From Trichosphaerium sp. ATCC 40318 (lineage: Eukaryota > Protista > Tubulinea), in the NCBI GenBank assembly GCA_038496445.1, contig JALMLS010000507.1, positions 124,001 to 188,000 on the forward strand: a DNA stretch of 64,000 nt, in the 5' to 3' direction. The position numbers were made by a program, and so were the translations under genes. The notes beneath the pieces were generated by a model, which saw only the letters and a program-made list of their open reading frames with translations, was not told the origin of the DNA and did no database searches. Numbering within the stretch: position 1 is the stretch's first letter; each line of letters begins with the position of its first letter. Below are positions 10,511 to 64,000 of this stretch, piece by piece.

Positions 10511-11457
10511 ATGACAACCAAGCACATCAAGGTATCGTTATTTAGTACCAATTGTAGGATTATAACAAAAAATAGCCACAATACAAAGAAGCAAATAGAG
10601 CGAATCTATTAACCCTGCCTAAGGAGTTACGCCAAGAAATAATAAAATTAGAACATACAGCTTATATAAAATGGCCATTATTATCCAAACAAACAGCAAA
10701 AACCCGATTCGATGAGCGATTAAGTAAGCATGGAGAATGGTTTAAGTTTTTTAACTCAGGTTCAAAGTCATGCCAACAGGAATGGCGTAATGGTAAAAAA
10801 CATGGTGTATTCAAGACTTGGCATGTTGATACAGGGAAACTAAAGGAGCTCAAATACTTTGAAAATGATTTATGTGAAGGAGAGTGTAAGTATTGGCGTG
10901 AAAATGGTTTATTAATGCAACAGTTTACTTGTATTAATGGTGTTCGTCAAGGGGAGTATAAGAGTTGGTGGTATAATGGTTATCAGCATAGACATTTTTT
11001 TTATGTTAATGATCTTGTTGAAGGACTTAGTAAGCAATGGAGTGCAACTGGTGCATTAATTGAAGAAGGTCATTATATAAAAGATAAAAAAGATGGTATT
11101 TTTAGGGCGTGGGGAAGAAATGGTAACTTAGTTCTGCAATGTTTTTATGTACAAGGTAAACTAGGTGGAGAGTATAAGTGTTGGTGGACAAATGGTCAAC
11201 TATGTGAGCACTACTTTTGCAATAATGGGAGGATTGAGGGTGACTATAAAGAATGGTACGAAAATGGAAGGATGAAGGTTCAGTCATCTTTGTCTTGTGC
11301 TAGATACCAAGGAGAACACAAGGAATGGTATGATAACGGGCAACTATCAAAGAAGTGTTTCTATGTTGATGGTAAACTTTCCGGTGAATACAAAAGCTGG
11401 AATTGGGACGGAGAGTTGAAAAATATCTGGTTTTACAAAGACGGAAAAAAAATATGA
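10511..11457 (+). CDS. F-box + MORN-variant (MORN_2 / YwqK-like) repeat protein
   Basis: MTTKHIK is followed by a 47-nt intron (10532-10578), then PQYKEANRANLLTLPKELRQEIIKL..WPLLSK (F-box-like). This is in frame with ~10 repeats of G.YK.W..NG.L....Y..G (ORF 10915-11457). Confidence 0.8.
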
Positions 11458-16280: not shown

Positions 16281-16429
16281 AGCACGTGTAAAAATTTGTT
16301 GTCACAAGATATAGAAAGAAGCTAAGTTGGGATGGATATTTCCGTCAGAACGCTCCAAGATAGGTTTATGTTGTTGCAGCCTGTACAAAGTATTTAACAA
16401 AATAAAATTGTATTTGAAATTTACCCGTA

Positions 16430-16690
16430 AACACTCCAGCACTGAGCTTGATCAAATCGTTGTGAACAACCCCAGAAAACAATGCATATCTCAAGGATTA
16501 GCGTGGGATCAAATGACAGTCGCCATCATCTGTACCTACAATAGTACCGTTAAACACCCTCTGCTGAATAAGGAATTATTAATTAATACTACCGTTGGTA
16601 GCCACGTGGATGCTGAACTTTGGTGAAGGGATCCATCGCCGCTAACATGAATAATAAAAAGTAGTGTTGCCGTATCTTTTTGAACAAGTT
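16430..16690 (-). pseudogene. Dispersed fragment of the 5' exons of the beta-helix GPCR family
   Basis: Gapped similarity to 50380-50640 (gcatatctcaaggatt..cagtcgccatcatct.tacctacaatagtaccgttaaa..ctgctgaa.aaggaatt). The start codon is lost. Confidence 0.75.
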
Positions 16691-42885: not shown

Positions 42886-43576
42886 AAAAAAAAACCAAAA
42901 CCCAAAAACAAACATTTAATTTTCAGACCCTTTTTTTGGAATTATTGTAAAAAGAAGGAAAAAAATGGGTCCCTTGGTTTGTTTAGGTAACTCTGCAAAA
43001 CATTTATTGTATGTGCCTATTTTTTGAGCCAAGAAATTAATAAAATTGTAAATTCCAAAAAAATTCTGAGAATATTGATGCACCAAAGAGCATCGTGTTG
43101 TTCATGCTTTTGAAAATGATGCTTCCTCCTAGTCGATACGCCCTCAAGGGGCAGTACATATCAATGGTAAAATTTGAAAGGAAGACACGCCAACTAAAGT
43201 GTTAATTTATGTTGGTTGATGGTAAACAGCTTGGTAAAAGTAAAGGATGGTGTAAAGCTAAAGTAGGATTTTGCAAATTAGATACGAAAGTTGACTTCGC
43301 TCAATTTTGTTGGTAAATCTAGTTATTAATAAAGTGAGTCTTTTAAAAGATAGCTTAACCCTAAAATAACGTAGTGCAATTTCAAGTCAAAGCCTTGCTA
43401 CTGCATTCACGTGCCATGAATTAGCACGTGTGTGCTGTTACATAGTTATAAACGTTCTAAATCTTTGTGCGGGGAAGAAAAACACTGGGTGTTACGGAGC
43501 GAAAGACAAAAGTCAGAGGACCAAGGTTTTATTTATAACCAAATTGTTAACATAAACAATGAGGAAGTATCACATA

Positions 43577-46500
43577 TCAATTGGTACTACTAGTTGAAAG
43601 GCGAGCGTGCAAGCTTTGAATTTCAGTTTGTAAACTGTGATTTTCAACCTCCAGTTTTTTAATCTTCTTCTTCAAATCAGGTTCTTTGCGGCTGTCAAAA
43701 GCACCTAAATCAAGCGAATGTTGCCTAACGTCATTAACTCACAAATGAGTACACACAAAGTACGTACTGTTGAGACCTGAGAGGTACGTCATTGCCAAAG
43801 AAAATGACATACAACTTTGGCGCAAAGATAACAGCAAGAGTCACTAAAAGACAAGATTTAGTAATTACGTTCAAAGTTGTTTGTGATGTACCTGTTGTAC
43901 TTATCCAAATTGCAACTGAGAAAAGAATACTGACACTCCTGAGAAGTGATAGTGACGTAATGGCGTATCCCAAACCAACAAGTATCAGCGCCCATACAAA
44001 CATATCATAAATAGCTGCTCCCAACCAACGTGATTCATTATAAATACTTGGAGCCTTACGGACTGCAAACGCAAGATATGAACCAACAATCAATATTATT
44101 CCCTACCACAATTGTTTAATAGAATGAAGTACCAATAGCTTGCGTACATTATAGACAATAGTGATAATCAGAAATACGCTAGCATATCTACTCTTGCAGT
44201 GCGCAACTTGAAAGCTGCTATCGCCTGGATCTGTTGTGTGCCTGAGCCGGTTTGGAGACATTACTGACCACATAATTAAAGCAACCTTAACAAGTTTAAG
44301 GATAAACAAAAGTAACAAAAGCGAAACAAACAAAAGCAAGGCATAAGGATACTATCTGACCGCTTATTAATGCAGCTGTTAGTTTAACAACATCTATTAG
44401 AGGCACTGCAACAACATGAGTTGGACATTTCTTGAGGGTGTTAAATATTCTGTGAATTCTGTAAGTTTTCGCCACAAGCGGCCTTAAAGTTGTGGTTAGT
44501 AGTTCAAACATATTGTAGTTGTACTGAAATAAAGCGTACGCCATAGTAGTAATAAATCCCATCAATGGAATCCATATCCGCAACTCACAGATAACATCAG
44601 ATATAGGAGCACTCCTTTATTGAGTTAGTACAACTTCATAGTACTACTGCCATACCAAACAATTGTGCCACAATACAACAAATATATACCAACAAGGATA
44701 ACCACAAGTAGTTCTGGTGTTGATGCCGTCAATATTGGTGAAGATTTCCTATTCAAACGTTAGTTAGTGTTGTTGAGAAAATACGATTTTAATGACATAC
44801 CAAAAGAATAATACAACAGCGACTACAGACAAAGTTAAAAGCAATCCAAAGCACCCAACTGATATTCCTATTATAGTTGCAGCATCACTCCACCTCCAAA
44901 CCCTTAAGGTTTGTTCTCTTTCCACCATTTGAATTGACACGGAACTATTTGAAAATACAAATGCTGGGGAAAATGGAAAAGTACCACTGTATTGGCGCTC
45001 AACAATCATGGTTCCATTAAATATAACACTTGACCCTTTAGAGAATTTCATCAAAGGGAATATGTCAAACAGGTGAACGCATGTTGAAGTAGGTATTGAT
45101 ATGAACAGTGTACCCACTAAACAAAAATAAATCAGGGCTGTAAAATACAAACTTACTAATAGTAATATTTGATTCAGTGATGGCCAAATAAGACTTGCCC
45201 AGTGTAATATTGAACCTGCTTTGAGAGCTAATAAGAATATCTGTAGAGTTTAGGCTTACACGTCCCTACATATTTGTAAGCAAGTTAACATGACCATACA
45301 CTTACGTCAACAACTAATGTCGAGTTTTGAAGCATTTCCAAAAAACTGTCTTGCCCATGAACAAACATCTCTGGTGCAATTCTCAAAGTGCCATATTCGA
45401 GGGTAACAATAGTAGTATGAGGGATATATATTGTGCTTGATATTAAACTATGTATGCTAATTGATCCTATTTTTACAAGGTTAATAACGTGATCTTTCAA
45501 CTAAGAAATATACCTCTGTTTTCTATTCCTATGGAATCTATTATCATGCCAGAAACTGAGGAGGTGCAATTCCGTTTGAGTATGAGCTGTTTCTCGAGGT
45601 TAGAAGACGTTCCCTAAATTTAGAAGGATTAAGAAGTGCATGACTTTGTTTCAACAGCAGTACATAAATTCGTCCACTTTCAGCATTAAAACTCGAATAC
45701 ACTTCCAACACTCCATCCTTCGAAAAATTCAGAAAGCCGTTTTCAATTACCAGATGTTCGACAGTGTCTGATTGCTCTTTGATCCAATTTGAAAACAGTG
45801 GCATACGCAATGTGCTAAATACATTACCTGAACAATATGTCATTAAAACAGCTACAAATAGAAAAGGTACCTCCAGTAATCCGTGGGAACAAGTCATCAA
45901 AATCATCTGGATTGGTATTTTCGAACACGTTGTTTGATACTGTAGTGTTTTTTAAATATCCGTTAGTTATTATATCATTTTCAAGACCACTATCGATTGA
46001 GATAGCTAGATTCTATCAGCGTTTATTATGGTATATGGTAGTACCTGATCCAGTATTGTTCTTGAATAAGTTATTTTCTACTGTAACATTACTTGTTATC
46101 AGTCTTAGTGCACCACCTCTATCATCAGCGGTGTTATTACTACAACTACATAAGCACTTTACAGTCATTTATTTTACCTGAAAGTGCACTCTTGCATTGA
46201 GGAACTGGTACTATTCCAGCTGAATAATCCACCACCATCATGAGCAATGTTATTACTACAACTGCATCAGCACTATTCATTCATTTTTTATACACTCAAT
46301 TATACCTGAAAGTGCAGCGTTGCACTAAGAAACTGCCCTCCCCGCTGTATAATCCACCACCAAAATCAGCGATGTTATTACTACATCTGCATCAGCGCTT
46401 TATAGTCATATATTTTACCTGAAAGTGCACTCTTGCATTGAGATGTCCCCGTTGTTGTGTAATCCACCACCATCATCATGAGCGATGTTATTACTACATC

Positions 46501-49500
46501 AGCATCAGCACTTTACATTCATTTATTTTACCTGAAAGTGCAGTCTTGCATTGAGAAACTGGTACTATGCTGACTGGATAATCCACCACCATCATCAGCG
46601 GTGTTATTACTACAACTACATAAGCACTATTCATTCGTTTTTTCTACACTCATTTATTTACCTGAAAGTGCAGACTTGCATTGAGAAACTGCAATTCCAA
46701 CTGTATAATCCACCACCATAATGGGCGATGTTATTACTACAACTGTGTCAGCACTTTACAGTCATTTATTTTACCTGAAAGTGCAGTCTTCCATTAAGAA
46801 ACTACCATCCTTACTGTATAATCCACCACCATCATTAGCAATGTTATTACTACAACTGCATCAGCGCTTTACAATCTTTTATTTTACCTGAAAGTGGAGT
46901 CTTCCATTGAGAAACTGGTACTATGCTGACTGAATAATCCACCACCATCATCAGCGGTGTTATTACTACAACTGCATCAACACTATTCATTCATTTTTTA
47001 TACGCTCATTTATTTACCTGAAAGTGCAGTTGTGGATTGAGTAACTGTCTTTGTAGCTGTATAATCCACCACCAAAATCAGCAGTGTTATTACTACATCT
47101 GCATCAGCGCTTTACAATCTTTTATTTTACCTGAAAGTGCAGTCTTCCATTGAGAAACTGGTACTATGCTGACTGGATAATCCACCACCATCATCAGCGG
47201 TGTTATTACTACAACTACATAAGCACTATTCATTCGTTTTTTCTACACTCATTTATTTACCTGAAAGTGCAGTTGTGGATTGAGTAACTGTCTTTGTAGC
47301 TGTATAATCCACCACCAAAATCAGCAGTGTTATTACTACATCTGCATCAGCGCTTTACATTCATTTATTTTACCTGAAAGTGCAGTCTTCCATTAAGAAA
47401 CTACCATCCTTACTGTATAATCCACCACCATCATTAGCAATGTTATTACTACAACTGCATCAGCGCTTTACAATCTTTTATTTTACCTGAAAGTGCAGTC
47501 TTCCATTGAGAAACTGGTACTATGCTGACTGAATAATCCACCACCATCATCATGAGCGATGTTATTACTACAACTGCATCAGCGCTTTACAGTCATTTAT
47601 TTTACCTGAAAGTGCACTCTTGCATTGAGATGTCCCCGTTGTTGTGTAATCCACCACCATCATCATGAGCGATGTTATTACTACAACTGCATAAGCGCTT
47701 TACAGTCATTTATTTTACCTGAAAGTGCAGTCTTCCATTGAGAACCTGGTATTGTACCAACTGTATAATCCACCACCATCATGAGCGATGTTATTACTAC
47801 ATCAGCATCAGCGCCTTATAGTCATCAATTTTACCTGAAAGTGCAGTCTTCCATTGAGGAACTGGTACTATGCTGACTGGATAATCCACCACCAAAATCA
47901 GCGGTGTTATTACTACAACTGCATCAACACTATTCATTCATTTTTTATACGCTCATTTATTTACCTGAAAGTGCAGTTGTGGATTGAGTAACTGTCTTTG
48001 TAGCTGTATAATCCACCACCAAAATCAGCAGTGTCTTTGTAGCTGTATAATCCATCACCAGCGATGTTATTACTACATCTGCATCAGTGCTTTACATTCA
48101 TTTATTTTACCTGAAAGTGCACTCTTCCATTGAGAACCTGGTATTGTACCAACTGAATAATCCACCACCATCATCATGAGCGATGTTATTACTACATCAG
48201 CATCAGCGCCTTATAGTCATCAATTTTACCTGAAAGTGCAGTCTTCCATTGAGAAACTGGTACTATGCCAACTGAATAATCCACCACCATCATCAGCGGT
48301 GTTATTACTACAACTACATAAGCACTATTCATTCGTTTTTTCTACACTCATTTATTTACCTGAAAGTGCAGTCTTGCATTGAGGAACTGGTACTTTCCAC
48401 ACTTAATAATCCACCACCATCATCACCAGCAATGTTATTACTACAACTGCATCAGCACTATTCATTCGTTTTTTATACACTCATTTATTTACCTAAAAGT
48501 GCAGCGGCGCACTGAGAAACTGCTAAACCCGCTGTATAATCCACCACCACCATAATTAGCGGTGTTATTACTACAACTGCATCAGCGCTTTACATTCATT
48601 TATTTTACCTGAAAGTGCAGTCTTCCATTGAGATGTCCCCGTCGTTGTGTAATCCACCACCATAACGAGCAATGTTATTACTACATCTGCATTAGCACTA
48701 TACACTCATTTATTTACCTGAAAGTGCAGCGGTGCACTGAGAAACTGCCATCCCCGCTGTATAATCCACCACCATCATAATGAGCGGTGTTATTACTACA
48801 TCAACATCAGCGCTTTACAGCCATTTATTTTACCTGAAAGTGCACTCTTGTATTAAGAAACTGCCATCCTTACTGTATAATCCACCACCAAAATAAGCGG
48901 TGTTATTACTACAACTGCATCAGCGCTTTACAATCTTGTTTTTACCTGAAAGTGCACTCTTGTATTGAGATGTCCCCATACACAAGCCATACTGCCCCAC
49001 CATTGGATGTAACTTGGTTGTTTGTAAATTTAGAACCTGAAATGTGTACTGTTGATTCGTTGCTTTGAGATGATTCAATTGCTAGAACAATTAGCTCTAA
49101 AAAAACACGTGGTAAACCTACCGATTCCTCCACCTAAATGTGCTGAACCAAATAAAAAGCTGCTATTCTTTACAATCACATTCACTGTTCCTTCGCCATA
49201 AATTTGCCCTTTAACAGTCAGCAACAATTTGTTTTGAAAGCAGCACCTTTGTACACGCGTCCATAGTTGAAGACGGAACTTTCAACAACTAGTGATGAGT
49301 TGAAAATGCTGACACTTGCTAAGTTTTTTTCAAAATGTACTCTAAAGAGTTATCAGTAAAACTACAAGTTCAATTTCCCTACCCTTTCAATGCCATAGAG
49401 CCTCCTTGATTTTGTATTATACTTGTAGTACGCTTGCAGTCGAAGCCGCACTTGTTTCGACGAAAAACACAGTCCCTACGATAGTACCAGTTAGAATAGT

Positions 49501-50624
49501 AATGGATACTAGAGGATGAAAAAGAAGGTCTTGACGAGATACATGTGAACGAAATAACAGTAACTACTCAAAAAACAATGCGTGGGTTTGCACTACAAAT
49601 TAGGGCGCATGTTCTATTTCTTTGAAATTCGTTCTTTTGGTGGCCTTTTGTACGACATTTTTGCAAAGAAAACAGCGTATTTTTAGTCAATCATGGCTAA
49701 TCAATATCGCGAAAAGTAGTGCAAACCCCGTTAGCTATTCAACTAAAAAAACTGCTTTGCTGTACGCCTGTGTCCCTTGCTATAAGTTCTTTAAATATTT
49801 AAAAACGTAGCTGTTCCTAAAATCGGCAAACCGAACATCAAAAAGCGTAAGCGAAGGGTTACCCTGGTAGTCCTAAGAAACTTACAAGAGCAGGCTTAGG
49901 TTTTCTACGAATAAAGCCACGTGTTTGGTAAAAAAAAAACTCAATTACTTTGCAGTTTTTGCTGTACCTAACGTCAACGTGCCCACCTCGTATTGTAATT
50001 ACCGAAGCGATATCACTCCCATCGTTACACTAAAGCGGAGTGTTAATATTATTAAAGTCAGCGTTAATTGTATGTTGTACGTTAAACCAAGGACACTCCA
50101 TCTGTGAAATTATAAGGTTTGAGAGTGTAATGTTAACACCAAAAGTCTGAATAAAGTAATTCGAATGTCCACCGTCAATAATAGTTTCGAAATCACCGCT
50201 TCCTATTACGCGTTTTAATACAAAAGCTGGGTACTTTAGTGCGTTGAAGCAAAACCATAAACGTACCTTCAATCGTAATTTTGGACAGATTCAGAACACT
50301 CCACGTGAGGTTGGTATTGTTGTAGCCTTGTACAAAACTATTTAATGATTGAAAACTGTTCTGTCTTACCCACATACACTCCAGCACCAAGCTTTATCAC
50401 GTCATCAGATATCGCCTCAGAAAACAAGGCATATCTCAAGGATTTACATGGATTCAAACGACTACAGTCGCCATCATCTATACCTACAATAGTACCGTTA
50501 AATACACTCTGCTGAACAAGGAATTAAATTAATCCTTACCGTTGGTGGCCACATGAAGTACTGCACATTGGTGAAGGGATACCATTGCCGCTAATACGAA
50601 TAATGAAAGGTAACGTGTTGCCAT
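43577..50624 (-). CDS. Class C (GABA-B/Grl-like) GPCR with beta-helix (Pmp/pectin-lyase-like) ectodomain, copy 1 (23 cassette exons)
   Basis: MATRYLSLFVLAAM..LHVATNG.DDGDC..NPCKSL cap, then GGxx / FxNN rungs. The 7TM region has the class C motifs CELRIW, AKTYRIHRIFN, NESRWLGAAIYD and IFAPKLY. The tail is a coiled coil (LKKKIKKLEVENHSLQTEIQSL), with TGA at 43577-43579. Confidence 0.88.
46178..48908 (-). repeat. Tandem exon+intron array, 23 units of ~110-145 bp
   Basis: Each unit reads tag|T AAT AAC..GGT GGT GGA TTA..ACT TTY AG|gta(a/t)a. Exons are 72-108 nt and all multiples of 3. Introns are ~34-55 nt in a few recurring types. Confidence 0.95.
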
Positions 50625-51821: not shown

Positions 51822-52757
51822 AGTGTCCTTGGTTTAACGTACAATCTCAGCTGAGTTTTAACAACTTAATTAAAACCCTTTTAGTGTGACAATGGCAGTG
51901 CTATTTTTTTTTTTGTACTCGTCGGAAATTTGTCACTTGCTTCCGTGAAACATATCAAACCGGTGAATGCTCTTAAAGGTTACTTAAGACTGCTATAACC
52001 CTTAAATTATGTTCACGATTTTATCACAAAAGAGCTGTTTCAATTGAGGTAATAGCTAAAATTTGCCACTTATTGTTGTGTATTGAGTAGCACTGCTGCT
52101 TATTAAATATTTAAAGCACCTATAACAAGGGCACAGGCGTAAGTACATTTAGAAGTTTTGAAAAGGCTATAGTCTACGTTTGTGCTCAGTCTTATTTATG
52201 TTTTGAGCAAATGTAGTTTCTATGAATACATTGTCGTTTTCGTCAAAATAAATGTGGAAACTGCACATATATACCATAGAACAATTCCAAGTATACATGC
52301 TCTAGGAGATCTACGTTGTTAAGAAGGTTTGGAATACTTTTACACTTGTGCTAAATTAGTCGTCAGAGTACATTTTGAAAGAAACTCAGCAAGTGTCAGC
52401 AATTTCCACTCTGAAGTAGTTGTTGAAAGTTTTGTATTCGAACATGAGCACAAAGGTGCTACTTTCAAAATAGACTATAGTGACAGCAATAGGGCAACTT
52501 TGTGGAGAAGGAAAAGTGAACGTGATTGTACAGGATAGTGTGTTTTTATTCGGTTCAGCAAATATAGGTGGGGGTGATAGGTAAGTTAAAAGAATTTTGT
52601 AGAGTTAATAGTTTCTAGCAATTGAATCATCTCAAAGGCTCGAATCAACTGTGCACATTTCAAGTTCTAAATTCGCACACAACAAAGCTACATCTTATGG
52701 TGGGGAGTGAGGCTTCTTTATGTGGAGATTGAGATACAAAACTGCACTTTCAGGTAT

Positions 52758-53051
52758 GTGGGGCAGCATCGCTTTTGAGACAGTTTCGAAAATTACAACA
52801 TTTTTGATTTTTGATGTTTACGGCATTTCGAGAATCTTTGAGACGTTTTTACTCACCTCAGAACCGTCTTAACCAAAAATTGTTATTATGAACTTTTAGC
52901 TAGTATTCTATAATTATAAGTTTAAAAACCATTTTGCGATTCGTTCGTGCTGTGCGGAGGAAAAGTAGCGACAGTCAAAGCAATTTTTTTCAAAACAAAC
53001 TTTTTCAAAAAATTTCGGAATTTCTGAAACTGTCTCAAAAGCGATGCTGCC
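52758..53051. mobile_element. MITE-like element, copy B (inverted relative to A)
   Basis: Same ~26-bp TIRs. The interior is the near-identical reverse complement of copy A. Confidence 0.85.
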
Positions 53052-54110
53052 TCTGTGTCGCTTATGAATCTACTGGAGGTATCTTTGTTCTTGTTAGCCC
53101 CTTTTAATACATGGGTAGGCAATGCATTCAGCACATTGCACATATTACTGTTTTCAAGTTGGGTTGAAGAGCATTCAGACACTGTTAAACATCTGGTCAT
53201 ACAAGATGGATTTCTGAATTTTTCAAGGAACGGAGTGTTGGAAGTGATTTAGAGGTTCAATGCTCAAATTGGACGAATATATGAATAGAAATACACAAAG
53301 CTCTCATAACTCAAGGCTTGTCTTTTTAGGGAACGGTGTCTTACCTTGAGAATCAGCTTTCAAAGGATGGAGTGTTGGAAGTGTATTCGAGTTTTAATGC
53401 TGAAAGTGGACGAATTTATGTACAGCTGTTCAAACAAAACGATACACTGCTTAATCCTTGTAAATTTAGGGAACGTCTTCTAACCTTGAGAAACAGCTCA
53501 TACTCAAACGTAGTTGCACCTCCTCTATTTCTGGTATGATATTTGACTCCATCGGCCTTTTTCGGCTATTTTTCCAAGTTTCCAAGGGTACTCCCTTTGA
53601 CAGCAGACCGTTTGGACCGTTGCCCTGAAACAAGCTATTGTTTCGAAGGGCTTTATCTTTTTTGAGATGAACCATGGTATGTGACGGAAAGATCAAAAGT
53701 CACGTGCTTTACATTGATTGTGAGTCTTTTAAAAGGAGGCTTAACCCTTAAGTAAAGTAGCGTCATCTCAAGTCAAAGCATTTGCTACTGCATTCACGCA
53801 CCAAAAAGAAGCACATGCATGCTGTTACATAGTTATAAACATTCTAAATCTTTGTGTGGGAAGATAACAATGTTATTAGGTGTTGTGGAGCGAAAAACGA
53901 AAGTCAGACTGTCGCATTGTTCAAGTCTTTCAGGAAGTCCTCTTCTGAAGTTGTACCTTGCCGAGCAAAAGGAAGCCTTAACAATCTACTTCAAACAAGA
54001 TCTAGCGACTATCAACATTGGCTACGCCTACAACTTATATGACAAAACTAAAGGGTTTATTCATAACCAAATTGTTAAATAAACAATAAAGAATGAGGAT
54101 GTATCACATA

Positions 54111-57100
54111 TCAATTGGTACTACTTGTTGAAAGGCGAGCATGCAAGCTTTGAATTTCAGTTTGTAAACTTAGATTTTCAGTTTGTAAACTTTGATTCTC
54201 AGCCTCCAGTGTTTTAATTTTCTTCTTCAGATCAGGTTCATTGCGGCTGTCAAAAGCACCTAAATCAAGCGAATGTTGCCTAACATCATTAGCTCATAAA
54301 TAATCACACATAGTGTACATACTGTTGAGACCTGAGAGGTATGTCATTGCCAAAGAAAATGACATACAACTTTGGCGCAAAGATAACAGCAAGAGTCACT
54401 AAAAGAACAAGATTTAGTAATTACGTCCAAAGTTGTTTGTGATGTACCTGTTGTACTTATCCAAATTGCAACTGAGAAAAGAATACTCACACTTTTGAGA
54501 AGTGATGGTGACGTGATGGCGTATCCCAAACCAACAAGTATCAGCGCCCATACGAACATATCATAAATAGCTGCTCCCAACCAACGTGATTCATTATAAA
54601 TACTTGGAGCCTTACGGACTGCAAACGCAAGATATGAACCAACAACTAATATTATTCCCTACACAATTGTTTAATAGAATGAAGTACCAATAGTGTGCGT
54701 ACATTATAGACGATAGTGAGGATCAAAAATACACTTGCATATTTACTATTGCATAGAACAAGCGAGATACTGGAATCGCCTGGATCTGGTGTGTGCCTTA
54801 GTCGGTTTGGAGACATTGCCGACCACACAATTAAAGCAATCTTGACAAGTTTAAGGATAAACAAGTAACAAAAACGAAATAAAAACAAAAGCATGGCATA
54901 AGGATACTATTTGACCGCTTATTAATGCAGCTGTTAGTTTAACCACATCTATTAGAGGCACTGCAACAACGTAAGTAGGACGTTTCTTGAGGGTGTTAAA
55001 TATTCTGTGAATTCTGTAAGTTTTTCCAACAAGCGGCCTTAAAGTTGTGGTTAGTAGTTCAAATATATCATAGTAATATCGAAATGCTTACGCCATAGTA
55101 GTAATAAACCCTATCAATGGAATCCATATCCGCAACTCACAGATAACATCAGATATAGGAGCAGTCCTTTAATGAGTTAGCTATAGTAAACAGTACTACT
55201 GCCATACCAAACAATTGTGCCACAATACAACAAGCAGATACCAACAAGGATAACCACAAGTAGTTCTGGTGTTGATGCCCTCAATATTGGTGAAGATTTC
55301 CTATTCAAACGTTAGTTAGTGTTGTTGAGAATACGATTTTAATGACATACCAAAAGTATAATACAACAGTGACTACAAACAGAGTTAAAAGCAATCCAAA
55401 GCACCCAACAGATATTCCTATTATAGTCGTAGCATCACTCCACCTCCAAACTCTTAATGTTCGTTCTCTTTCCACCATTTGAATTGACATGGAACTATTT
55501 GACAATACTAATTCAGGGGAAAATGGAAAAGTAGTGCTGTGCTCGACAATCATGGTTCCATTAAATATAACACTTGACCCTTCAGAGAATTCAATCAAAG
55601 GGATCAAGTCAAACAGTTGAACGTGTGTTGAAGTAGGTATTGATACGAACAGTGTACCCACTAAACAAAAATTAATCAAAAAGCTGTAAACAATGACAAA
55701 CTTACTAATAATAATATTCGATTCAGTGATGGCCAAATAAGACTTGCCCAGTGTAATATTGAACCTGCTTTGAGGGCTAATAGGAATATCTGTAGAGTTT
55801 AGGCTTACATGTCCCTACATATTCATAAGCAAGTTGACATTACCATACACTTACATCAACAACTAATGTCGAATTTTGAAGCATTTTCAAACAACTATCT
55901 TGCCCATTAACAAACATCCCTGGTGCAATACTCAAAGTAGCATATTCAAGGTTGACGATAGAAGTATGAGGGATATAGATTGTACTTGATATTAAACTAT
56001 GTATGCTCATTGATCCTATTTTTACAAGGTTAATCACGTGATCTTTCAACTAAGACATGTACCTTTGTTTTCTATTCCTATGGAATCTATTATCATGCCA
56101 GAAACTGAGGAGGTGCAATTCTGTTTGAGTATGAGCTGTTTCTCAAGGTTAGAAGACGTTCCCTAAATTTACAAGTTAAGCAGCATCGTTTTTGTTTCAA
56201 CAGCAGTACATAAATTCGTCCACTTTCAGCATTAAAACTCGAATACACTTCCAACACTCCATCCTTCGAAAAATTCAGAAAGCCTCTGTCAATGACCAGA
56301 CGTTCGACAGTGTCTGATTGCTCTTTGATCCAATTCGAAAACAGTGGTATATGTAGTGTGCTAAACGCATTACCTGAACAATACGTCATTAAAACAGCTG
56401 CAAATAGAAAAAGATACCTCCAGTAATCCGTGGGAACAAGTCATCAAAATCATCTGGATTGGTATTTTCAAATGTGTTGTTTGATACCGTAGTGTTTTTT
56501 ACATATCCGTTAGTTATTATATCATTTCCAAGACCATTATTAATTGAGATAGCTAGATTCTATCAGTGTATATTATGGTATATGTTAGTGCCTGATCCAC
56601 TATTGTTATTGAATAAGTTATTTTCTACTGTAACATTACTTGTTATCAGTCTTAGTGCACCACCTCTATTATCAGCGATGTTATTACTACAGCTGCATTA
56701 GTGCTATTCATTTTTTTACACTCATTTGTTTACCTGAAAGTGCAGTCTTGCATTGAGGAATTGGTACTATCAAAACTGAATAATCCACCACCATCATCAT
56801 GAGCGATGTTATTACTACAACTGCATAAGTGCTATTCATTTTTTACAGTCATTTATTTTACCTGAAAGTGCAATCTTGCATTGAGAAACTCCCTTTGTCG
56901 CTGTATAATCCACCACCAGCATGAGCAGTGTTATTACTAAATTGCATCAGCACTATTCATTCATTTTTTTCTACACTCATTTATTTACCTGAAAGTGCAG
57001 TCTTGCATTGAGAAACTCCCTCTGAAACCCCAATTGCCGTATATTCCACCACCATCACCATAAGCGGTGTTATTACTACAACTGCATCAGCACTATTCAT

Positions 57101-59353
57101 TCATTTTTTTCTACACTCATTTATTTACCTGAAAGTGCAGTCTTGCATTGAGAAACTGTCATCATAGCTGTATATTCCACCACCATCACCATACTGAGCG
57201 GTGTTATTACTACAACTGCATAAGCACTATTCATTCATTTTTTTCTACACTCATTTATTTACCTGAAAGTGCAGCCTTGCATTGAGAAACTCCCTCTGAA
57301 ACCCCAATTGCTGTATATTCCACCACCATCACCATAAGCGGTGTTATTACTACAACTGCATCAGCACTATTCATTCATTTTTTTCTACACTCATTTATTT
57401 ACCTGAAAGTGCAGTCTTCCATTGAGATGTCCACAGAATCAAGCCATACTGCCCCACCATAGAAGAAATGAGCTTGGTTGTTTGTAAATTTAGAGCCTGA
57501 AATGTGTAAAGTTGATTCATGGAACGGAGATGCAATTGCTAGAACAATTAGCTCTAAAAAAACATGGTAAACCTACCGATTCCTCCACCTACATATGCTG
57601 AACCAAATAAAAAGCTGCTATTCTTTACAATCACATTGACTTTTCCTTCGCCATAAATTTGCCCTGCAACCATCAGCAACAATTTGTTTTGAAAGCGGCA
57701 CCTTTGTGCGCGTGTCCATGGTTGAAAGTAGAATTTTCAACAACTAGTCTAGAGTTTAAAATGCTGACACTTGCTGAGTTTCTTTCAAAATGTACTCTAA
57801 AGAGTAATCAGCAAAACTACAAGTTCAAATATCCTACCCTTTCAATAACATAGAGCCTCCTTGATTTTGTATTATACTTGAAGTGCTTGTGTCAAAGTAT
57901 GTACAGACGCTGCATTTGTTTTGACGAAAAACACAGTCCCTACGATAGTACCAGTTAGAATAGTAATGGATACTTGAGGATGAAACGAGATATACGTGAA
58001 TAGGATTAGTACAACTAAAATGTCGAAAAAAAAAAGGCGAAAAAATGTCAAAGTGATATTGAACTGTTCGCCTCATAACCTAAAACTGGTTAAGACGATA
58101 ACTGGTTTTCTAAGACCTCTATTCCGGGAACAATATGTAGAACTTTGTCAAAAAAAAGTCAAAAATTTGGCACACTAATTATCCTATATTATGCCATAGG
58201 AACTATAGAAAGCCCCCTTTTAGTGGGAGTTGGGGTAGAGAGCACCGACTGAGCGCCAGAACCCAGTTGTCTCCCTTTGTGGAATATTGAACGTTGTTGG
58301 GTTCATTGTCAGCCACCGGACGTCTTTTCACAAATTGCACTGAAACAAGAAGTCGGTTATTTAAACCTGAACGGTTAACTGGTTTGTAACCGGTTAAGTA
58401 AGAGCTCTATACAAAATAACAGTAACTACTCAAACCAAATAATTCCTCAAAAAAGAAAAAAATTCGATATTCAACTAAAAAAACGCTTTGCTGTACGCCT
58501 GTGTCCCTTGCTATCAGTTCTTTAAATATTTAAAACGTAGCTGTTCCTACAATCGGCATAGCGAACACGTTCAAAAAAGCGTAAGCGAAGGGTTACCATG
58601 GTAGTCCTAAGAACCTACAAGAGCAAGTGTAGGTTTGCTACGAAAAAAAGCCACGTGTTTGATATACTTTGCAGTTTTGGCGGGCTGTACCTAACGTCAA
58701 CATGCCCACCTCGTGTTGTAAGTACCGAAGCGATATCACTGCCATCACACTAAAGCAGAGTTTTAATATTGTTAAACTCAGCGTTAATTGTATGTTGTAC
58801 TTTAACCCGAGGACACGCCATTTGTTGAATTGTAAGGTTTGAGAGTGTAATATTAACACCAAAAGTCGTTACATTCATAAAGTAATTGGAATCTCCGCCG
58901 TCAATAATAGTTTCTAAATCACCGCTTCCTATTACGCGTTTTAATAACCAAATCTTGGTGATTTAGATGGTTGAAACAAAACCATAAACGTACCTTCAAT
59001 CGTAACGTTGGACAGATTCAGCGGTTCCCACGTGAGGTTGGTATTGTTGTCGCCTTGAACAAAACTATTTAATAATTATTGAAAACTGTTCTGTCGTACC
59101 CGCATACACTCCAGCACCAAGCTTTATCACGTCATCAGATATCGCCTCAGAAAACAAGGCATATCTCAAGGATTTACATGGGTTCAAATGACTACAGTCG
59201 CCATCATCTGTACCTACAATAGTACTGTTAATACACTCTGCTGAACAAGGAATTAAATTAATCCTTACCGTTGGTGGCCACATGAAGTACTGCGCATTGG
59301 TGAAGAGATACCATTGCCGCTAATACAAATAATGAAAAGTAACGTGTTGCCAT
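54111..59353 (-). CDS. Class C GPCR with beta-helix ectodomain, copy 2 (5 cassette exons)
   Basis: Exon-by-exon paralog of copy 1, with ATG at 59353 and TGA at 54111-54113. It has the same 7TM motifs (KTYRIHRIFN, NESRW, FAPKLY). Confidence 0.85.
56734..57349 (-). repeat. Tandem exon+intron array, 5 units
   Basis: Exons: NNTAYGDGGGIYSNWGFRGSFSMQGCTFS, NNTAQYGDGGGIYSYDDSFSMQDCTFS, NNTAYGDGGGIYGNWGFRGSFSMQDCTFS, NNTAHAGGGLYSDKGSFSMQDCTFS, NNIAHDDGGGLFSFDSTNSSMQDCTFS. Confidence 0.93.
58001..58410. mobile_element. ~410-bp intronic insertion specific to GPCR copy 2
   Basis: Copy 1 reads gtgaa^cgaaataacag, whereas copy 2 has ~410 extra bp at that point. It contains an imperfect inverted repeat taggattagt..actaattatccta (58001-58185) and a hairpin ttaactggtt-tgt-aaccggttaa near the right end. 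Confidence 0.5.
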
Positions 59354-61230: not shown

Positions 61231-61262
61231 ATACATACGCTCACTCTCATGCAAACAAATTG

Positions 61263-61440
61263 CAATTGAGAAGAGAACACTCACACTTTTGAGAAGTGAT
61301 GGTGACATGATAGCATATCCCAGTGCCCATACAAACATATCATAAATAGCCGCTGCCAACCAACGCGATTTATTATAAATACTCAGAGCCTTACAGACTG
61401 CAAGATATGAATCAAACTAATATTATTCCCTACACAATTG
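61263..61440 (-). pseudogene. Fragment of the GPCR TM6-7 exon
   Basis: Similar to 54465-54670 (SRWLAAAIYDMFVWA.GYAIMSPSLLKSVS) with deletions. Confidence 0.8.
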
Positions 61441-61849
61441 TTCCCAACCATACTTGTTAAACAGAATGGAGTACCAATCATGAATCGTGGGTTTGAGAAG
61501 GCTGTTATAGCGACTTGAAAGATAATGTGTGAAAACGTAAAAATACCTAGCGTACCAATAACATCTCTCAGGACCGCCATAGCTACGTGTTGCCATGTTA
61601 AAAAAATTGAACGAGCTAAATGGTAAGTTTGTTGGTGTACCGTTTATGATAACTACATAACTATTGTTGTATAACATGCAATCTAGAGTTAAGGCAAAAG
61701 TATACAGTACGCTACTATAAAAATAGCTACATGTACGAAAATATCATGAGTGAAAGACTCGGCGATTCTACAAAATTTGTTTAGAAAACAGCATTATTGG
61801 CTATTTTCCTTTTTTGACTGTAGATATTTGTGCAGGTTTATGCACGTGA

Positions 61850-62160
61850 TCAGTTGCAATTTGGATAAGTACAACAGGTACATCACAACCTTTGAGTCGG
61901 AATTACAAAATCTTGTTCTGTAGCGACTCTTGCTGTTATCTTTGCGCCAAGATGTATGTTATTTTATTTGGTAACAATACACCTCTTAGTTCTCAACAGT
62001 AAGTACACTGTGTAGTTTTGTTACCTATATTGTAGACAGGTGCTGTGGACAGTATCCATGATTCTGACTCGAACAAGGAAATTAAAGAATTGGATATCCA
62101 GAATCAACGGTTACAAGCTGAGAATCAAACCTTGCATGCCCACCTTTCAACCGAGTGACA
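61850..62160 (+). pseudogene. Fragment of the GPCR 3' end (TM7 + coiled coil), opposite orientation
   Basis: VAIWISTT|TLAVIFAP..(frameshift)..|GAVDSIHDSDSNKEIKELDIQNQRLQAENQTLHAHLSTE*. A further minus-strand tail scrap lies at ~62540-62630. Confidence 0.75.
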
Positions 62161-63191: not shown

Positions 63192-64000
63192 ATGGCAACA
63201 CGTTACTTTTCATTATTCGTTTTCGCGGTGATGGTATCCCTTCACCAATGCGCAGTACTTCATGTGGCCACCAACGGTAAGGATTAATTTAATTCCTTGT
63301 TCAGCAGAGGGTGTATTAACGGTACTATTGTAGGTACAGATGATGGCGACTGTAGTCATTTGAACCCATGTAAATCCTTGAGATATGCCTTGTTTTCTGA
63401 GGCGATATCTGATGACGTGATAAAGCTTGGCGCTGGAGTGTATGCGGGTAAAGATAGAACAGTTTTTCAATAATTATTAAATAGTTTTGTTCAAGGCGAC
63501 AACAATACCAACCTCACGTGGGAACCGCTGAATCTGGCCAACGTTACAATTGAAGGTACGTTTTATGGTTTTGCCTCAACACTAAATTACCCAGCCTTTG
63601 TTATTAAAACGTGTGGTAGGAAGCGGTGATTTAGAAACTATTATTGACGGCGGAGATACCAATTACTTTATGAATGTAACGACTTTTGGTGTTAATATTA
63701 CACTCTCAAACCTTACAATTCAACAGATGGCGTGTCCTCGGTTCAACGTACAACATACAATTAACGCTGAGTTTAACAATATTAAAACTCCGCTTTAGTG
63801 TGACAATGGCAGTGATATCGCTTCGGTACTTACAATACAAGGTGGGCACGTTGACATTAGGTACAGCCTGCCAAAACTGCAAATTATTGAGTGTTTTTTT
63901 TTTTACCAAACACGTGGCTTTATTCGTAGCAAACCTACGCCTGTTCTTGTAGGTTTCTTAGAACTACCATTCGCTTACGCTTTTTTTGAATGCTTAATTT
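63192..64000 (+). CDS. Beta-helix GPCR family copy 3, first five exons (runs off the window end)
   Basis: MATRYFSLFVFAVMVSLHQCAVLHVATN|GTDDGDCSHLNPCKSLRYALFSEAISDDVIKLGAGVYA|GDNNTNLTWEPLNLANVTIE|GSGDLETIIDGG..ACPRFN|CDNGSDIASVLTIQGGHVDIR. The upstream flank is shared with copies 1 and 2. Confidence 0.8.

What the first reader, a model, noticed from the sequence alone, without database searches (positions are those of the whole stretch)
46178..48908. Cassette-exon array of hypervariable beta-helix rungs in a class C GPCR ectodomain: candidate receptor-diversification system
Seen: 23 tandem exon+intron units. Each exon encodes exactly one rung, S-N-N-(T/I)-A-x(2-3)-G-G-G-L-x(4-6)-(S/D/R)-x-(S/L)-x-x-x-C-T-F. 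All are flanked by phase-2 introns, and all lengths are multiples of 3 (72, 75, 78, 81, one 108). None has a stop codon. Framework codons are nearly fixed. The two loops vary strongly and are rich in Tyr/Trp/His/Asp (HD, DF, HDD, HY, RY, NYG; WNST, GEG, QHST, YKD, WYNT, KDG, VEST). Known: GGxx/FxxN repeats build right-handed beta-helices, and AKTYRIHRIF / NESR / PKLY mark class C 7TMs. Inference: any exon can be skipped, duplicated or swapped without breaking frame. That would give a combinatorial binding surface on a signalling receptor, analogous to one-repeat-per-exon LRR arrays, Dscam or VLRs, but on a beta-helix-GPCR scaffold in a protist. Plausible roles are prey, pathogen or self recognition.
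Basis: partly seen in the sequence, partly recalled or inferred. Interest (0 to 1): 0.93.

Follow-up and report, generated by a model that had tools for sequence, protein, structure and literature searches.

The report
One-rung-per-exon beta-helix receptor array
An amoeba receptor gene builds its long rod-shaped outer part from 23 tandem copies of one small exon plus one tiny intron; the layout is real and evolves quickly by recombination, but nothing shows that the cell mixes the exons to make many receptor versions.

Summary
On the minus strand, 24 short GT-AG introns (37-52 nt) bound 23 exons at exactly 48908-46178. The exons are 72-81 nt, plus one of 108 nt. All are multiples of 3, all sit between phase-2 introns, and none has a stop. 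Each encodes one Chlam_PMP-type rung. The gene (50624-43577) can be threaded as one reading frame: signal peptide, beta-helix, stalk, class C 7TM, charged C-terminal tail.

"Hypervariable" is overstated. There are 20 distinct cassettes in about four rung classes, with recent multi-unit duplications. Loop dN/dS is about 1.2-1.5 and not significantly above 1. The units are recombinant mosaics (PHI-type test, p<0.0002).

A tandem paralogue that is 85-95% identical in the flanks has only 5 cassettes, none shared. The same architecture occurs in a Trichosphaerium transcript, another MMETSP transcript and one ENA contig. In that contig several rungs share one exon.

Best reading: an exon+intron module amplified and shuffled by unequal crossing-over and gene conversion in a fast-evolving receptor family, and spliced constitutively. 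No RNA run could be listed, so cassette skipping is untested; short introns and the lack of selector elements argue against it. Earlier scan notes report the same architecture at another locus of this genome, and many one-ankyrin-per-exon arrays.

The parts
43577..50624 (-). Gene A, whole coding span from ATG 50624 to the stop at about 43577. Layout: signal peptide, N-cap, beta-helix, 23-cassette array, stalk, class C 7TM, charged C-terminal tail.
   Evidence: A crude splice-aware dynamic-programming model threads one ORF of about 1600 aa. The start and first intron were fixed by comparing A with B. The exon coordinates outside the array are approximate.
50540..50624 (-). Exon 1, whose product starts MATRYLSLFVLAAMVSLHQC..., a likely signal peptide. 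It is followed by a 56-nt intron at 50539-50484.
   Evidence: A 1-nt A/B indel falls inside this intron, and both genes stay in frame with the TTGTAG acceptor.
48946..50483 (-). N-terminal cap (GIDDGDCSRLNPCKSLRYAL...) and the non-array beta-helix rungs, up to the rung that ends ...ISIQECTF.
   Evidence: ORF pieces. Chlam_PMP hit on 48945-49133 (E 0.004). The span 50029-49383 is poorly modelled.
46140..48945 (-). The array: 24 introns and 23 one-rung exons. The exons span 48908-46178.
47965..48072 (-). Exon 8, 108 nt: an irregular cassette with a 33-nt in-frame internal duplication (GDGLYSYKD-TADFGGGLYSYKD).
44905..46139 (-). The last beta-helix rungs (SNNTADDRGGALRL...) and the juxtamembrane stalk.
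   Evidence: Beta_helix E 1.2e-4 and Chlam_PMP E 0.005 on 46019-46168. The stalk aligns with P0002 residues 702-860.
43806..44904 (-). Class C-type 7TM domain in about 5 exons, with the motifs AKTYRIHRIF, YNESRW and APKLY. It contains two short in-frame introns at about 44539-44483 and 43892-43845.
   Evidence: 7tm_3 E 1.4e-7 on the TM5-7 exon alone. blastp against P0002 gives 8e-57. phmmer gives 98-113 bits to canonical ANF_receptor+7tm_3 proteins.
43577..43724 (-). C-terminal charged, heptad-like tail (KKKIKKLEVENHSLQTEIQSLHARL), possibly a coiled coil.
   Evidence: P0002 has a similar charged tail. The coiled coil is inferred, not tested.
54111..59353 (-). Gene B, a tandem paralogue. Its flanks are 85-95% identical to gene A.
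56734..57349 (-). The array of gene B: 5 cassettes of 75-87 nt with 47-53-nt introns. None equals an A cassette; the best amino-acid identities are 62-81%.
63192..63969 (+). N-terminal exons of a third family member (gene C), on the plus strand and running off the window.
   Evidence: tblastn E 4.6e-71; blastn.
52368..53425 (+). Inverted partial copy, a likely pseudogene fragment, of the beta-helix and stalk region. It lies between genes A and B.
   Evidence: tblastn hits at 56-91% identity.

Best explanation
Gene A encodes a class C-type seven-helix receptor. Its extracellular part is not the usual Venus-flytrap domain but a very long right-handed parallel beta-helix of Pmp-type rungs, about 30 in all. 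Twenty-three of these rungs come from a 113-133-bp module of one rung exon plus one short phase-2 intron. That module was amplified in tandem by unequal crossing-over or replication slippage. The copies were then shuffled by further unequal exchange and gene conversion, anchored on the invariant framework (SNN, GGTGGTGGATTA, CTF) and on the intron sequences. The introns are ordinary spliceosomal introns and are most probably all removed, giving one long rod. Diversity arises in the germline over evolutionary time. Paralogues in a recombination-prone tandem cluster differ in rung number, and so in rod length, and in D/Y/H/W-rich surface turns. The structural core stays under purifying selection. 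The likely role is sensing or adhering to an extracellular polymer or surface, such as a prey or substrate polysaccharide, and signalling through the 7TM domain. Shown here: the anatomy, the homology, the mosaicism and the difference between paralogues. Inferred: splicing, expression, ligand class and signalling.
For: Array anatomy and canonical splice signals in all 24 introns: GTAAA donor, a CTGAT/CTTAT/CTAAT branch-like motif about 12 nt before TGTAG. Other introns of the gene are equally short and carry TACTAAC-like branch sites. Without splicing, every rung runs straight into a stop (AGG TAA).

Selection: the framework is under purifying selection (about 0.15-0.27). The loops are near neutral (1.2-1.5, p=0.21).

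Recombination: the PHI-type statistic is 0.330 observed against 0.518 +/- 0.028 in permutations, p<0.0002, and 44% of informative site pairs are incompatible. Identical left halves pair with three different right-half classes. The similarity matrices of left halves, right halves and introns are almost uncorrelated.

Growth by duplication: a 432-nt block at 94.7% identity and a 310-nt block at 96.5%, at offsets of 5 and 2 units.

Paralogue comparison: gene B has 5 cassettes, none shared. The flanks are 85-95% identical, but the terminal cassettes only 78-79%. More family fragments lie in the window.

Family: P0002, a Trichosphaerium transcript, has Beta_helix + Chlam_PMP + 7tm_3 at 7.7e-46. P0032 has Chlam_PMP + 7tm_3. 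Contig L001 carries the same family, also as tandem genes, with several rungs per exon. The spliced 7TM of gene A scores 218 bits to P0002 and 98-113 bits to canonical class C receptors.

Fold: the AlphaFold2 model of the P0002 helix has pLDDT 83 and three strands per rung, and the variable positions map to turns. The best Foldseek rows are beta-helix adhesins, polysaccharide lyases and tailspikes.

Literature: each Pmp repeat forms one coil, with the motif residues facing inward (PMC11166332).
Against: No transcript evidence could be obtained: no RNA run was listed, and a spliced-junction 19-mer gave only chance hits in metagenomes. Constitutive splicing and expression are therefore inferred. 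Loop dN/dS sits consistently at or above 1 within rung classes, and the variable positions have a composition like that of binding sites. Both leave room for selection for diversity beyond neutral drift. The exon model outside the array is crude, with 50029-49383 unresolved, so a defect there cannot be excluded. Array copy number could not be checked against reads.
Confidence: 0.68

Rival explanations
1. Combinatorial cassette splicing. Because every exon is frame-neutral and every splice site is alike, the cell skips different subsets of rungs, by regulation or at random. One gene would then give a repertoire of receptors with different rods and binding surfaces.
For: All 23 exons are symmetric (phase 2-2) and multiples of 3. 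Donors and acceptors are nearly identical, so non-adjacent pairing is chemically possible. The variable positions are D/Y/H/W-rich, like binding sites. Loop dN/dS is at or above 1.
Against: Symmetry follows automatically from duplicating a rung with its intron, so it is not evidence of skipping. The introns are 37-52 nt and have no docking or selector complementarity. From general knowledge, genomes with such short introns splice by intron definition; there exon skipping is rare and intron retention dominates, and retention here gives an immediate stop. Earlier scan notes report the same exon-per-repeat layout in unrelated ankyrin-PARP genes of this genome, with introns spliced out and no shuffling seen (unchecked here). 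No RNA data were available.
Confidence: 0.1
2. A decaying or silent family member. The array would be a neutrally expanding minisatellite inside a gene that is no longer expressed or functional.
For: No RNA holder was listed. The cluster contains obvious gene fragments. The loops evolve at a near-neutral rate. One cassette has lost the framework Cys and one carries an irregular 33-nt insertion.
Against: About 600 array codons have no stop or frameshift. All 24 introns keep their GT, branch-like motif and AG. The framework dN/dS is 0.15-0.27. One ORF can be threaded from the signal peptide to the C-terminus. Paralogue B keeps the same organisation.
Confidence: 0.12
3. Assembly artefact in copy number or order. 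The repeat is real, but the 23-unit length and the mosaic order come from mis-assembly of near-identical 113-133-bp units.
For: Blocks of 300-430 nt at 95-97% identity lie within the array, and such blocks are hard to assemble from short reads. No reads could be laid on the array, because one search returned no runs.
Against: Twenty of the 23 units are distinct in sequence. The array is flanked by unique sequence that is collinear with paralogue B. There are no N runs in the window. A collapsed or chimeric assembly would not be expected to keep frame and splice signals in every unit.
Confidence: 0.07
4. Somatic DNA-level diversification, such as programmed gene conversion or recombination within or between the clustered arrays in individual cells or nuclei. 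This would resemble VLR assembly or antigenic-variation systems.
For: There is a strong recombination signature. Tandem and inverted family copies and fragments nearby could act as donors. The framework core is invariant even at synonymous sites.
Against: The signature is equally well explained by germline unequal crossing-over. The germline gene is complete and spliceable, unlike an incomplete VLR gene. No dedicated enzyme or signal sequence was seen. Nothing here separates somatic from evolutionary events.
Confidence: 0.03

Closest known systems
P0002: Trichosphaerium sp. ATCC 40318 transcript CAMPEP_0168523514 (MMETSP0405), with its relatives P0032 and contig L001
   Same: It has the same domain order: Pmp-type beta-helix, stalk, 7tm_3, then a charged C-terminal tail. 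The stalk and 7TM align with gene A at 8e-57, or 218 bits after removing two in-frame introns. Its rung motif, CTFxNNTAxxGGGL, is almost the same. In L001 the genes are also in tandem and share intron positions in the 7TM.
   Different: It is only about 32-49% identical to gene A. It has far fewer rungs. In L001 several rungs lie in one exon, so the one-rung-per-exon module and its 23-fold amplification are specific to this genome's lineage.
Chlamydial polymorphic membrane proteins (Pmp; Pfam PF02415)
   Same: They share the FxxN and GGA(I/L/V) repeat, one repeat per beta-helix coil, with the motif residues pointing inward and the surface turns variable (PMC11166332, PMC10715098). They are also a paralogous, fast-evolving surface family. 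Their helices are comparably long: 22-27 coils are reported, against about 30 here.
   Different: Pmps are bacterial autotransporter passengers anchored by a beta-barrel, and their genes have no introns. Here the helix is the ectodomain of a eukaryotic 7TM receptor and is split into exons. No common descent beyond the repeat type is claimed.
Class C GPCRs (mGluR, GABA-B, CaSR; amoebozoan Grl receptors)
   Same: The 7TM matches 7tm_3, with the KTYRI..IF, NE(S)R/K and PKxY motifs. There is a large ectodomain. The C-terminal heptad-like tail recalls the GABA-B coiled coil (inference).
   Different: Gene A has no ANF_receptor/Venus-flytrap domain and no cysteine-rich domain, which every other long hit does have. 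The ligand-binding principle must therefore differ. No paper in the searched library links 7tm_3 with a beta-helix or Pmp ectodomain. One amoebozoan GPCR survey lists 'PbH1' only among its abbreviations.
One-repeat-per-exon arrays made by tandem exon duplication (LRR, ankyrin, Ig and EGF arrays; the ankyrin-PARP arrays noted in this genome)
   Same: These also have symmetric exons that each hold one structural repeat, near-identical short introns, variation concentrated on surface residues, and copy-number differences between paralogues.
   Different: The repeat here is a beta-helix rung, for which I found no described exon-per-rung array. The host protein is a GPCR.
Dscam exon clusters and lamprey VLR assembly
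   Same: They resemble gene A only in the general idea of many alternative modules for one receptor surface.
   Different: Dscam uses mutually exclusive choice of one exon per cluster, guided by docking and selector RNA pairing in long introns. VLRs are assembled somatically from flanking cassettes into an incomplete gene. Neither feature is present here.

Membership tests
Class C GPCR 7TM (Pfam 7tm_3, PF00003) | Significant match of the seven-helix region to the 7tm_3 profile | tested here: met
   The TM5-7 exon alone scores 31.8 bits, E 1.4e-7, just under the 33.5 cut-off for a whole protein. The spliced 7TM scores 218 bits to P0002, which itself matches PF00003 at 157 bits, and 98-113 bits to proteins with ANF_receptor+7tm_3. 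The Pfam profile could not be run on the spliced sequence.
Class C GPCR 7TM (Pfam 7tm_3, PF00003) | Venus-flytrap (ANF_receptor/PBP) ligand-binding ectodomain, as in canonical members | tested here: not met
   No ANF_receptor or Peripla_BP hit on any ectodomain piece. The ectodomain is Beta_helix/Chlam_PMP. This feature defines the canonical architecture, not the 7TM family itself.
Class C GPCR 7TM (Pfam 7tm_3, PF00003) | G-protein coupling and dimerisation | not testable with these tools
   A heptad-like C-terminal tail is the only hint.
Pmp-type right-handed parallel beta-helix repeat (Chlam_PMP PF02415 / Beta_helix PF13229) | FxxN and GG(A/G)(I/L/V) motifs at regular spacing of about 25 residues | tested here: met
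   All 23 cassettes read (CT)F-SNN-xA-x(2-3)-GGGL. The flanking rungs hit Chlam_PMP (E 0.004-0.005) and Beta_helix (E 1.2e-4) below the cut-off, because only single rungs could be submitted. The consensus of 30 homologues shows the same repeat.
Pmp-type right-handed parallel beta-helix repeat (Chlam_PMP PF02415 / Beta_helix PF13229) | One repeat folds as one three-stranded coil | tested here: inconclusive
   This was shown only for the homologue P0002:230-640 (AlphaFold2, pLDDT 83, pTM 0.85, three strands per 27-28 residues). Foldseek top rows are beta-helix proteins, but none reaches E<0.001. Gene A's own spliced array could not be submitted by reference.
Dscam-type mutually exclusive or cassette alternative splicing | Transcript isoforms that differ in which array exons are included | not testable with these tools
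   No RNA run was listed. The spliced-junction search gave only chance hits.
Dscam-type mutually exclusive or cassette alternative splicing | Docking-site and selector-sequence complementarity in the introns | tested here: not met
   Only three weak inverted repeats lie in 45800-49400, and none recurs per unit. The introns are 37-52 nt.
VLR-type somatic cassette assembly | An incomplete germline gene plus flanking donor cassettes that lack splice signals | tested here: not met
   The germline gene is complete, and every cassette carries canonical splice sites.

The most novel reading that the evidence does not exclude
The uniform splice sites and frame-neutral rungs are exploited, by stochastic or regulated exon skipping or by somatic recombination among the clustered arrays. 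Single cells or nuclei of this multinucleate amoeba would then express beta-helix receptors of different length and surface from one locus. That would be a protist receptor-diversification system built on a solenoid scaffold. It might be shared with the ankyrin-per-exon arrays noted elsewhere in the same genome.
Probability: 0.08. Interest if true: 0.85.

Novelty: new variant of a known kind. Interest (0 to 1): 0.45.

Why it matters
This documents a class C-type GPCR family whose ligand-binding part is a Pmp-like beta-helix rod instead of a Venus flytrap. I found no discussion of this architecture in the searched literature, and it is so far seen only in a few amoeboid protists. It also gives a clean example of a solenoid protein that grows and diversifies by amplifying an exon+intron module. 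Rod length would differ by about 18 rungs between neighbouring paralogues; at about 4.8 Å rise per rung (general knowledge) that is roughly 9 nm. If the scan's notes on ankyrin arrays hold, amplification of exon+intron modules is a general way this genome makes fast-evolving recognition proteins. That would be worth a genome-wide study. The locus is also a well-defined target for testing whether short-intron protists ever use cassette skipping.

Tried and rejected
1. RNA evidence. The look-up of sequencing runs (kind rna) on 43500-49499 listed no run.

2. A spliced-junction 19-mer (CTF|SNN) was searched in metagenome contigs. It gave 26 single matches, and none carried PMP cassettes, so all are chance hits.

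3. The representative search with the TM5-7 exon found no protein above 49% identity. This gene's own product is therefore not in the protein collections, and no protein id exists for it. The spliced array could not be folded or run through Pfam by reference.

4. An ectodomain search with P0002 returned generic bacterial and eukaryotic PMP/beta-helix proteins only. A search with the stalk and 7TM found only P0032 as a further family member.

5. P0007, a Logan contig, turned out to be a canonical ANF_receptor+7tm_3 gene and is not relevant.

6. The test for positive selection in the loops was not significant. I therefore reject "hypervariable under diversifying selection" as shown.

7. My first dynamic-programming gene model was biased by array codons and ended early. 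The later models are still approximate outside the array.

8. Foldseek against the PDB gave no hit at E<0.001.

9. A self-blastn of the array for long near-identical blocks (93% identity or more over at least 150 nt) printed nothing; an ungapped diagonal scan found them.

Full report
Observation. The finding lies on the minus strand. A pattern parse finds 24 introns between 48945 and 46140. Seventeen are 37-38 nt and seven are 50-52 nt. All start GTA(A/T)A and all end TGTAG. About 12 nt before the acceptor each carries a CTGAT, CTTAT or CTAAT motif that looks like a branch site. Exon lengths are 72, 75, 78 and 81 nt, and one is 108 nt. All are multiples of three. Each starts with the last base of a split AG|T serine codon, so the introns are phase 2, and none contains a stop. 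If the spacers were not spliced out, each rung would run straight into AGG TAA. Tandem Repeats Finder sees the same array, with periods of one, two and three units.

What the exons encode. Every cassette reads SNN(T/I)A, a 2-3-residue loop, GGGL, a second variable stretch, then CTF. This is the FxxN / GG(A/G)(I/L/V) repeat of Pfam Chlam_PMP. Only single rungs could be submitted by reference. The flanking rungs hit Chlam_PMP (E 0.004-0.005) and Beta_helix (E 1.2e-4). An alignment of 30 homologues gives the same repeat consensus, NCTFxxNxAxxxGGGIxxxxSxxxxx. Published modelling of chlamydial Pmps shows that one such repeat forms one coil of a parallel beta-helix, with the motif residues facing inward (PMC11166332).

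The rest of the gene. The start is at 50624: MATRYLSLFVLAAMVSLHQC..., a likely signal peptide. It is followed by a 56-nt intron. A 1-nt difference between gene A and its paralogue falls inside that intron, which supports the intron call. A crude splice-aware model threads one reading frame of about 1600 residues. In order it contains an N-terminal cap, non-array rungs, the array, two to three more rungs, a stalk, seven transmembrane helices and a charged heptad-like tail that ends at about 43577. The stretch 50029-49383 is not resolved.

The TM5-7 exon alone matches 7tm_3 at E 1.4e-7. I removed two short in-frame introns indicated by the homologue alignments; both carry TACTAAC-like branch sites. 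The spliced 7TM then scores 218 bits to P0002 and 98-113 bits to canonical ANF_receptor+7tm_3 receptors.

Relatives. A HMMER search of 1.84 billion representatives with the TM5-7 exon gave only 34 hits, none above 49% identity. The best long hit, P0002, is a transcript of Trichosphaerium sp. ATCC 40318 (MMETSP0405). It has Beta_helix, Chlam_PMP and 7tm_3 (7.7e-46) in one protein. All the other long hits that were scanned have the usual ANF_receptor ectodomain. A second MMETSP transcript, P0032, has Chlam_PMP + 7tm_3. An ENA contig, L001, carries the same family as tandem genes and shares 7TM intron positions, but there about five rungs sit in one open exon. The beta-helix-to-class C fusion is therefore a small family of amoeboid protists that is expressed in at least one of them. 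The one-rung-per-exon module is a local elaboration.

The window's composition fits the published Trichosphaerium sp. draft genome: GC about 38% and introns of 37-57 nt here, against GC 37.69% and a mean intron of 75 nt there (PMC10521059). Earlier scan notes call this genome a marine amoeba. The identification is an inference. I found no paper that links 7tm_3 to a beta-helix or Pmp ectodomain.

How variable are the cassettes? Twenty of the 23 are distinct, and three pairs are identical. They fall into about four classes by the second loop: YSKDGSFL, HNxGDIS, YSxxxSxS(I/V) followed by the long intron, and xSxxSTSxSM. Framework codons are almost invariant, even at synonymous sites (pS 0.079, pN 0.022). 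The introns differ by 0.168 on average. The loops differ more (loop 2: pS 0.288, pN 0.328). A minimum-change count gives 54 non-synonymous and 6 synonymous changes in the loops, a ratio of about 1.5, which is not significantly above neutral (p=0.21). The framework ratio is 0.15. Within rung classes the right halves give pN/pS of 0.135/0.076 and 0.230/0.171. Variable positions are 52% Asp/Tyr/His/Trp against 10% in the rest of the protein. So the core is constrained and the surface turns are free or mildly favoured to change. "Hypervariable" and "positive selection" are not demonstrated.

Where the variable residues sit. The spliced array could not be submitted by reference. I therefore folded the homologous helix P0002:230-640, whose rungs have nearly the same motif. 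The model has pLDDT 83 and pTM 0.85, with three strands per rung. Mapping the motif onto it places SFSM, TFS and LYSx on the strands. NN and the residues before Cys fall in tight turns. The two variable stretches fall in the turns on either side of the strand that follows GGGL. Foldseek's best PDB rows are right-handed beta-helix adhesins, polysaccharide lyases and phage tailspikes, none at E<0.001.

How the array arose. The similarity matrices for left halves, right halves and introns are almost uncorrelated (Spearman 0.20, 0.10 and -0.09). The identical left half IAHDD in units 7, 11, 12 and 21 is joined to three different right-half classes. A PHI-type test on 45 informative sites gives 0.330 observed against 0.518 +/- 0.028 in permutations (p<0.0002), and 44% of site pairs are incompatible. 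Blocks of 432 nt (94.7% identity, offset five units) and 310 nt (96.5%, offset two units) show recent multi-unit duplications. Exon 8 carries a 33-nt internal duplication. These are the marks of unequal crossing-over and gene conversion in a tandem array.

The neighbourhood. Gene B (59353 to about 54111, minus strand) is 85-95% identical to A in both flanks. It has only five cassettes of 75-87 nt with 47-53-nt introns. None equals an A cassette, and the terminal cassettes are only 78-79% identical. This confirms note s1-401055. A third copy starts at 63192 on the plus strand. Inverted or partial copies lie at 52368-53425, 61258-62155 and 16429-16557. The locus is a recombination-prone cluster of a young gene family.

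Interpretation. Frame neutrality of every exon follows directly from duplicating a whole rung together with a phase-2 intron, so by itself it says nothing about skipping. All splice sites are equally canonical. The introns are too short for selector elements, and no such complementarity exists. The gene is complete in the germline. From general knowledge, short-intron genomes splice by intron definition, where exon skipping is uncommon. Earlier notes of this scan, unchecked by me, report many one-ankyrin-per-exon arrays with about 52-nt introns in PARP genes of the same genome, spliced and without evidence of shuffling. They also report another locus with the present architecture (s1-400754).

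I therefore read the array as a product of a general habit of this genome, the amplification of exon+intron modules, acting on a fast-evolving receptor family. Diversity is generated between paralogues over evolutionary time. No RNA run could be listed and a spliced-junction search gave only chance hits. Combinatorial splicing is therefore untested, and I give it about 10%.

Function. This part is inferred. The product would be a 7TM receptor carrying a rod of about 30 rungs. The published longest Pmp helices have 22-27 coils (PMC11166332). The rod would bear two stripes rich in Asp, Tyr, His and Trp. By analogy with beta-helix adhesins and carbohydrate-active proteins, it would bind an extended polymer or surface, with signalling through the class C-type helices. 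The C-terminal heptad-like tail recalls the coiled coil of GABA-B receptors and may mediate pairing.

Verdict. The architecture is unusual and, as far as I could find, undescribed. The proposed diversification mechanism is unsupported. I rate it a new variant of known kinds: tandem exon duplication in a repeat protein, and a class C GPCR with a non-canonical ectodomain. Interest is moderate.

Noticed in passing
window 47965-48072 (-): Exon 8 is 108 nt because of a 33-nt in-frame internal duplication (…GDGLYSYKD TADFGGGLYSYKD…). This would put an 11-residue bulge in one rung. It looks like a slippage or recombination scar inside an exon.
   Followed up: partly
window 46888-46965 (-): Unit 17 has TCC (Ser) in place of the otherwise invariant framework TGC (Cys) of CTF.
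   Followed up: no
window 46178-48908 (-): The framework codons AGT AAT AAC, GGT GGT GGA TTA and ACT are identical in all 23 copies, even at four-fold degenerate sites, while the introns differ by about 17%. This suggests homogenisation by gene conversion or selection at the nucleotide level, such as splice enhancers or recombination anchors.
   Followed up: partly
window 54111-59353 (-) and 43577-43724 (-): Gene B's C-terminal heptad-like tail carries one extra SLQTENL heptad compared with gene A. This indel is the length of one heptad-like unit.
   Followed up: no
window 44483-44539 and 43845-43892 (-): Two introns in the 7TM region are in frame and free of stops (57 and 48 nt), so they read through as apparent insertions. 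Both have TACTAAC-like branch sites, and the corresponding residues are absent from P0002. The relative L001 has an intron at the same position as the first of them.
   Followed up: partly
window 52368-53425 (+), 61258-62155, 16429-16557 (-), 63192-63969 (+): Further full or fragmentary copies of the same receptor family lie in both orientations. They include an inverted fragment between genes A and B and a third gene that starts near the window end.
   Followed up: partly
window 8798-9481 (-), 10576-11454 (+): Unrelated neighbouring genes: a GMC oxidoreductase exon (E 2.4e-21) and a protein with MORN_2 repeats (E 2.6e-16).
   Followed up: no
L001:5699-7163: The ENA contig that carries the closest genomic relative also has a second family member starting directly downstream of the first. 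Tandem clustering of this family is therefore not unique to this genome.
   Followed up: partly
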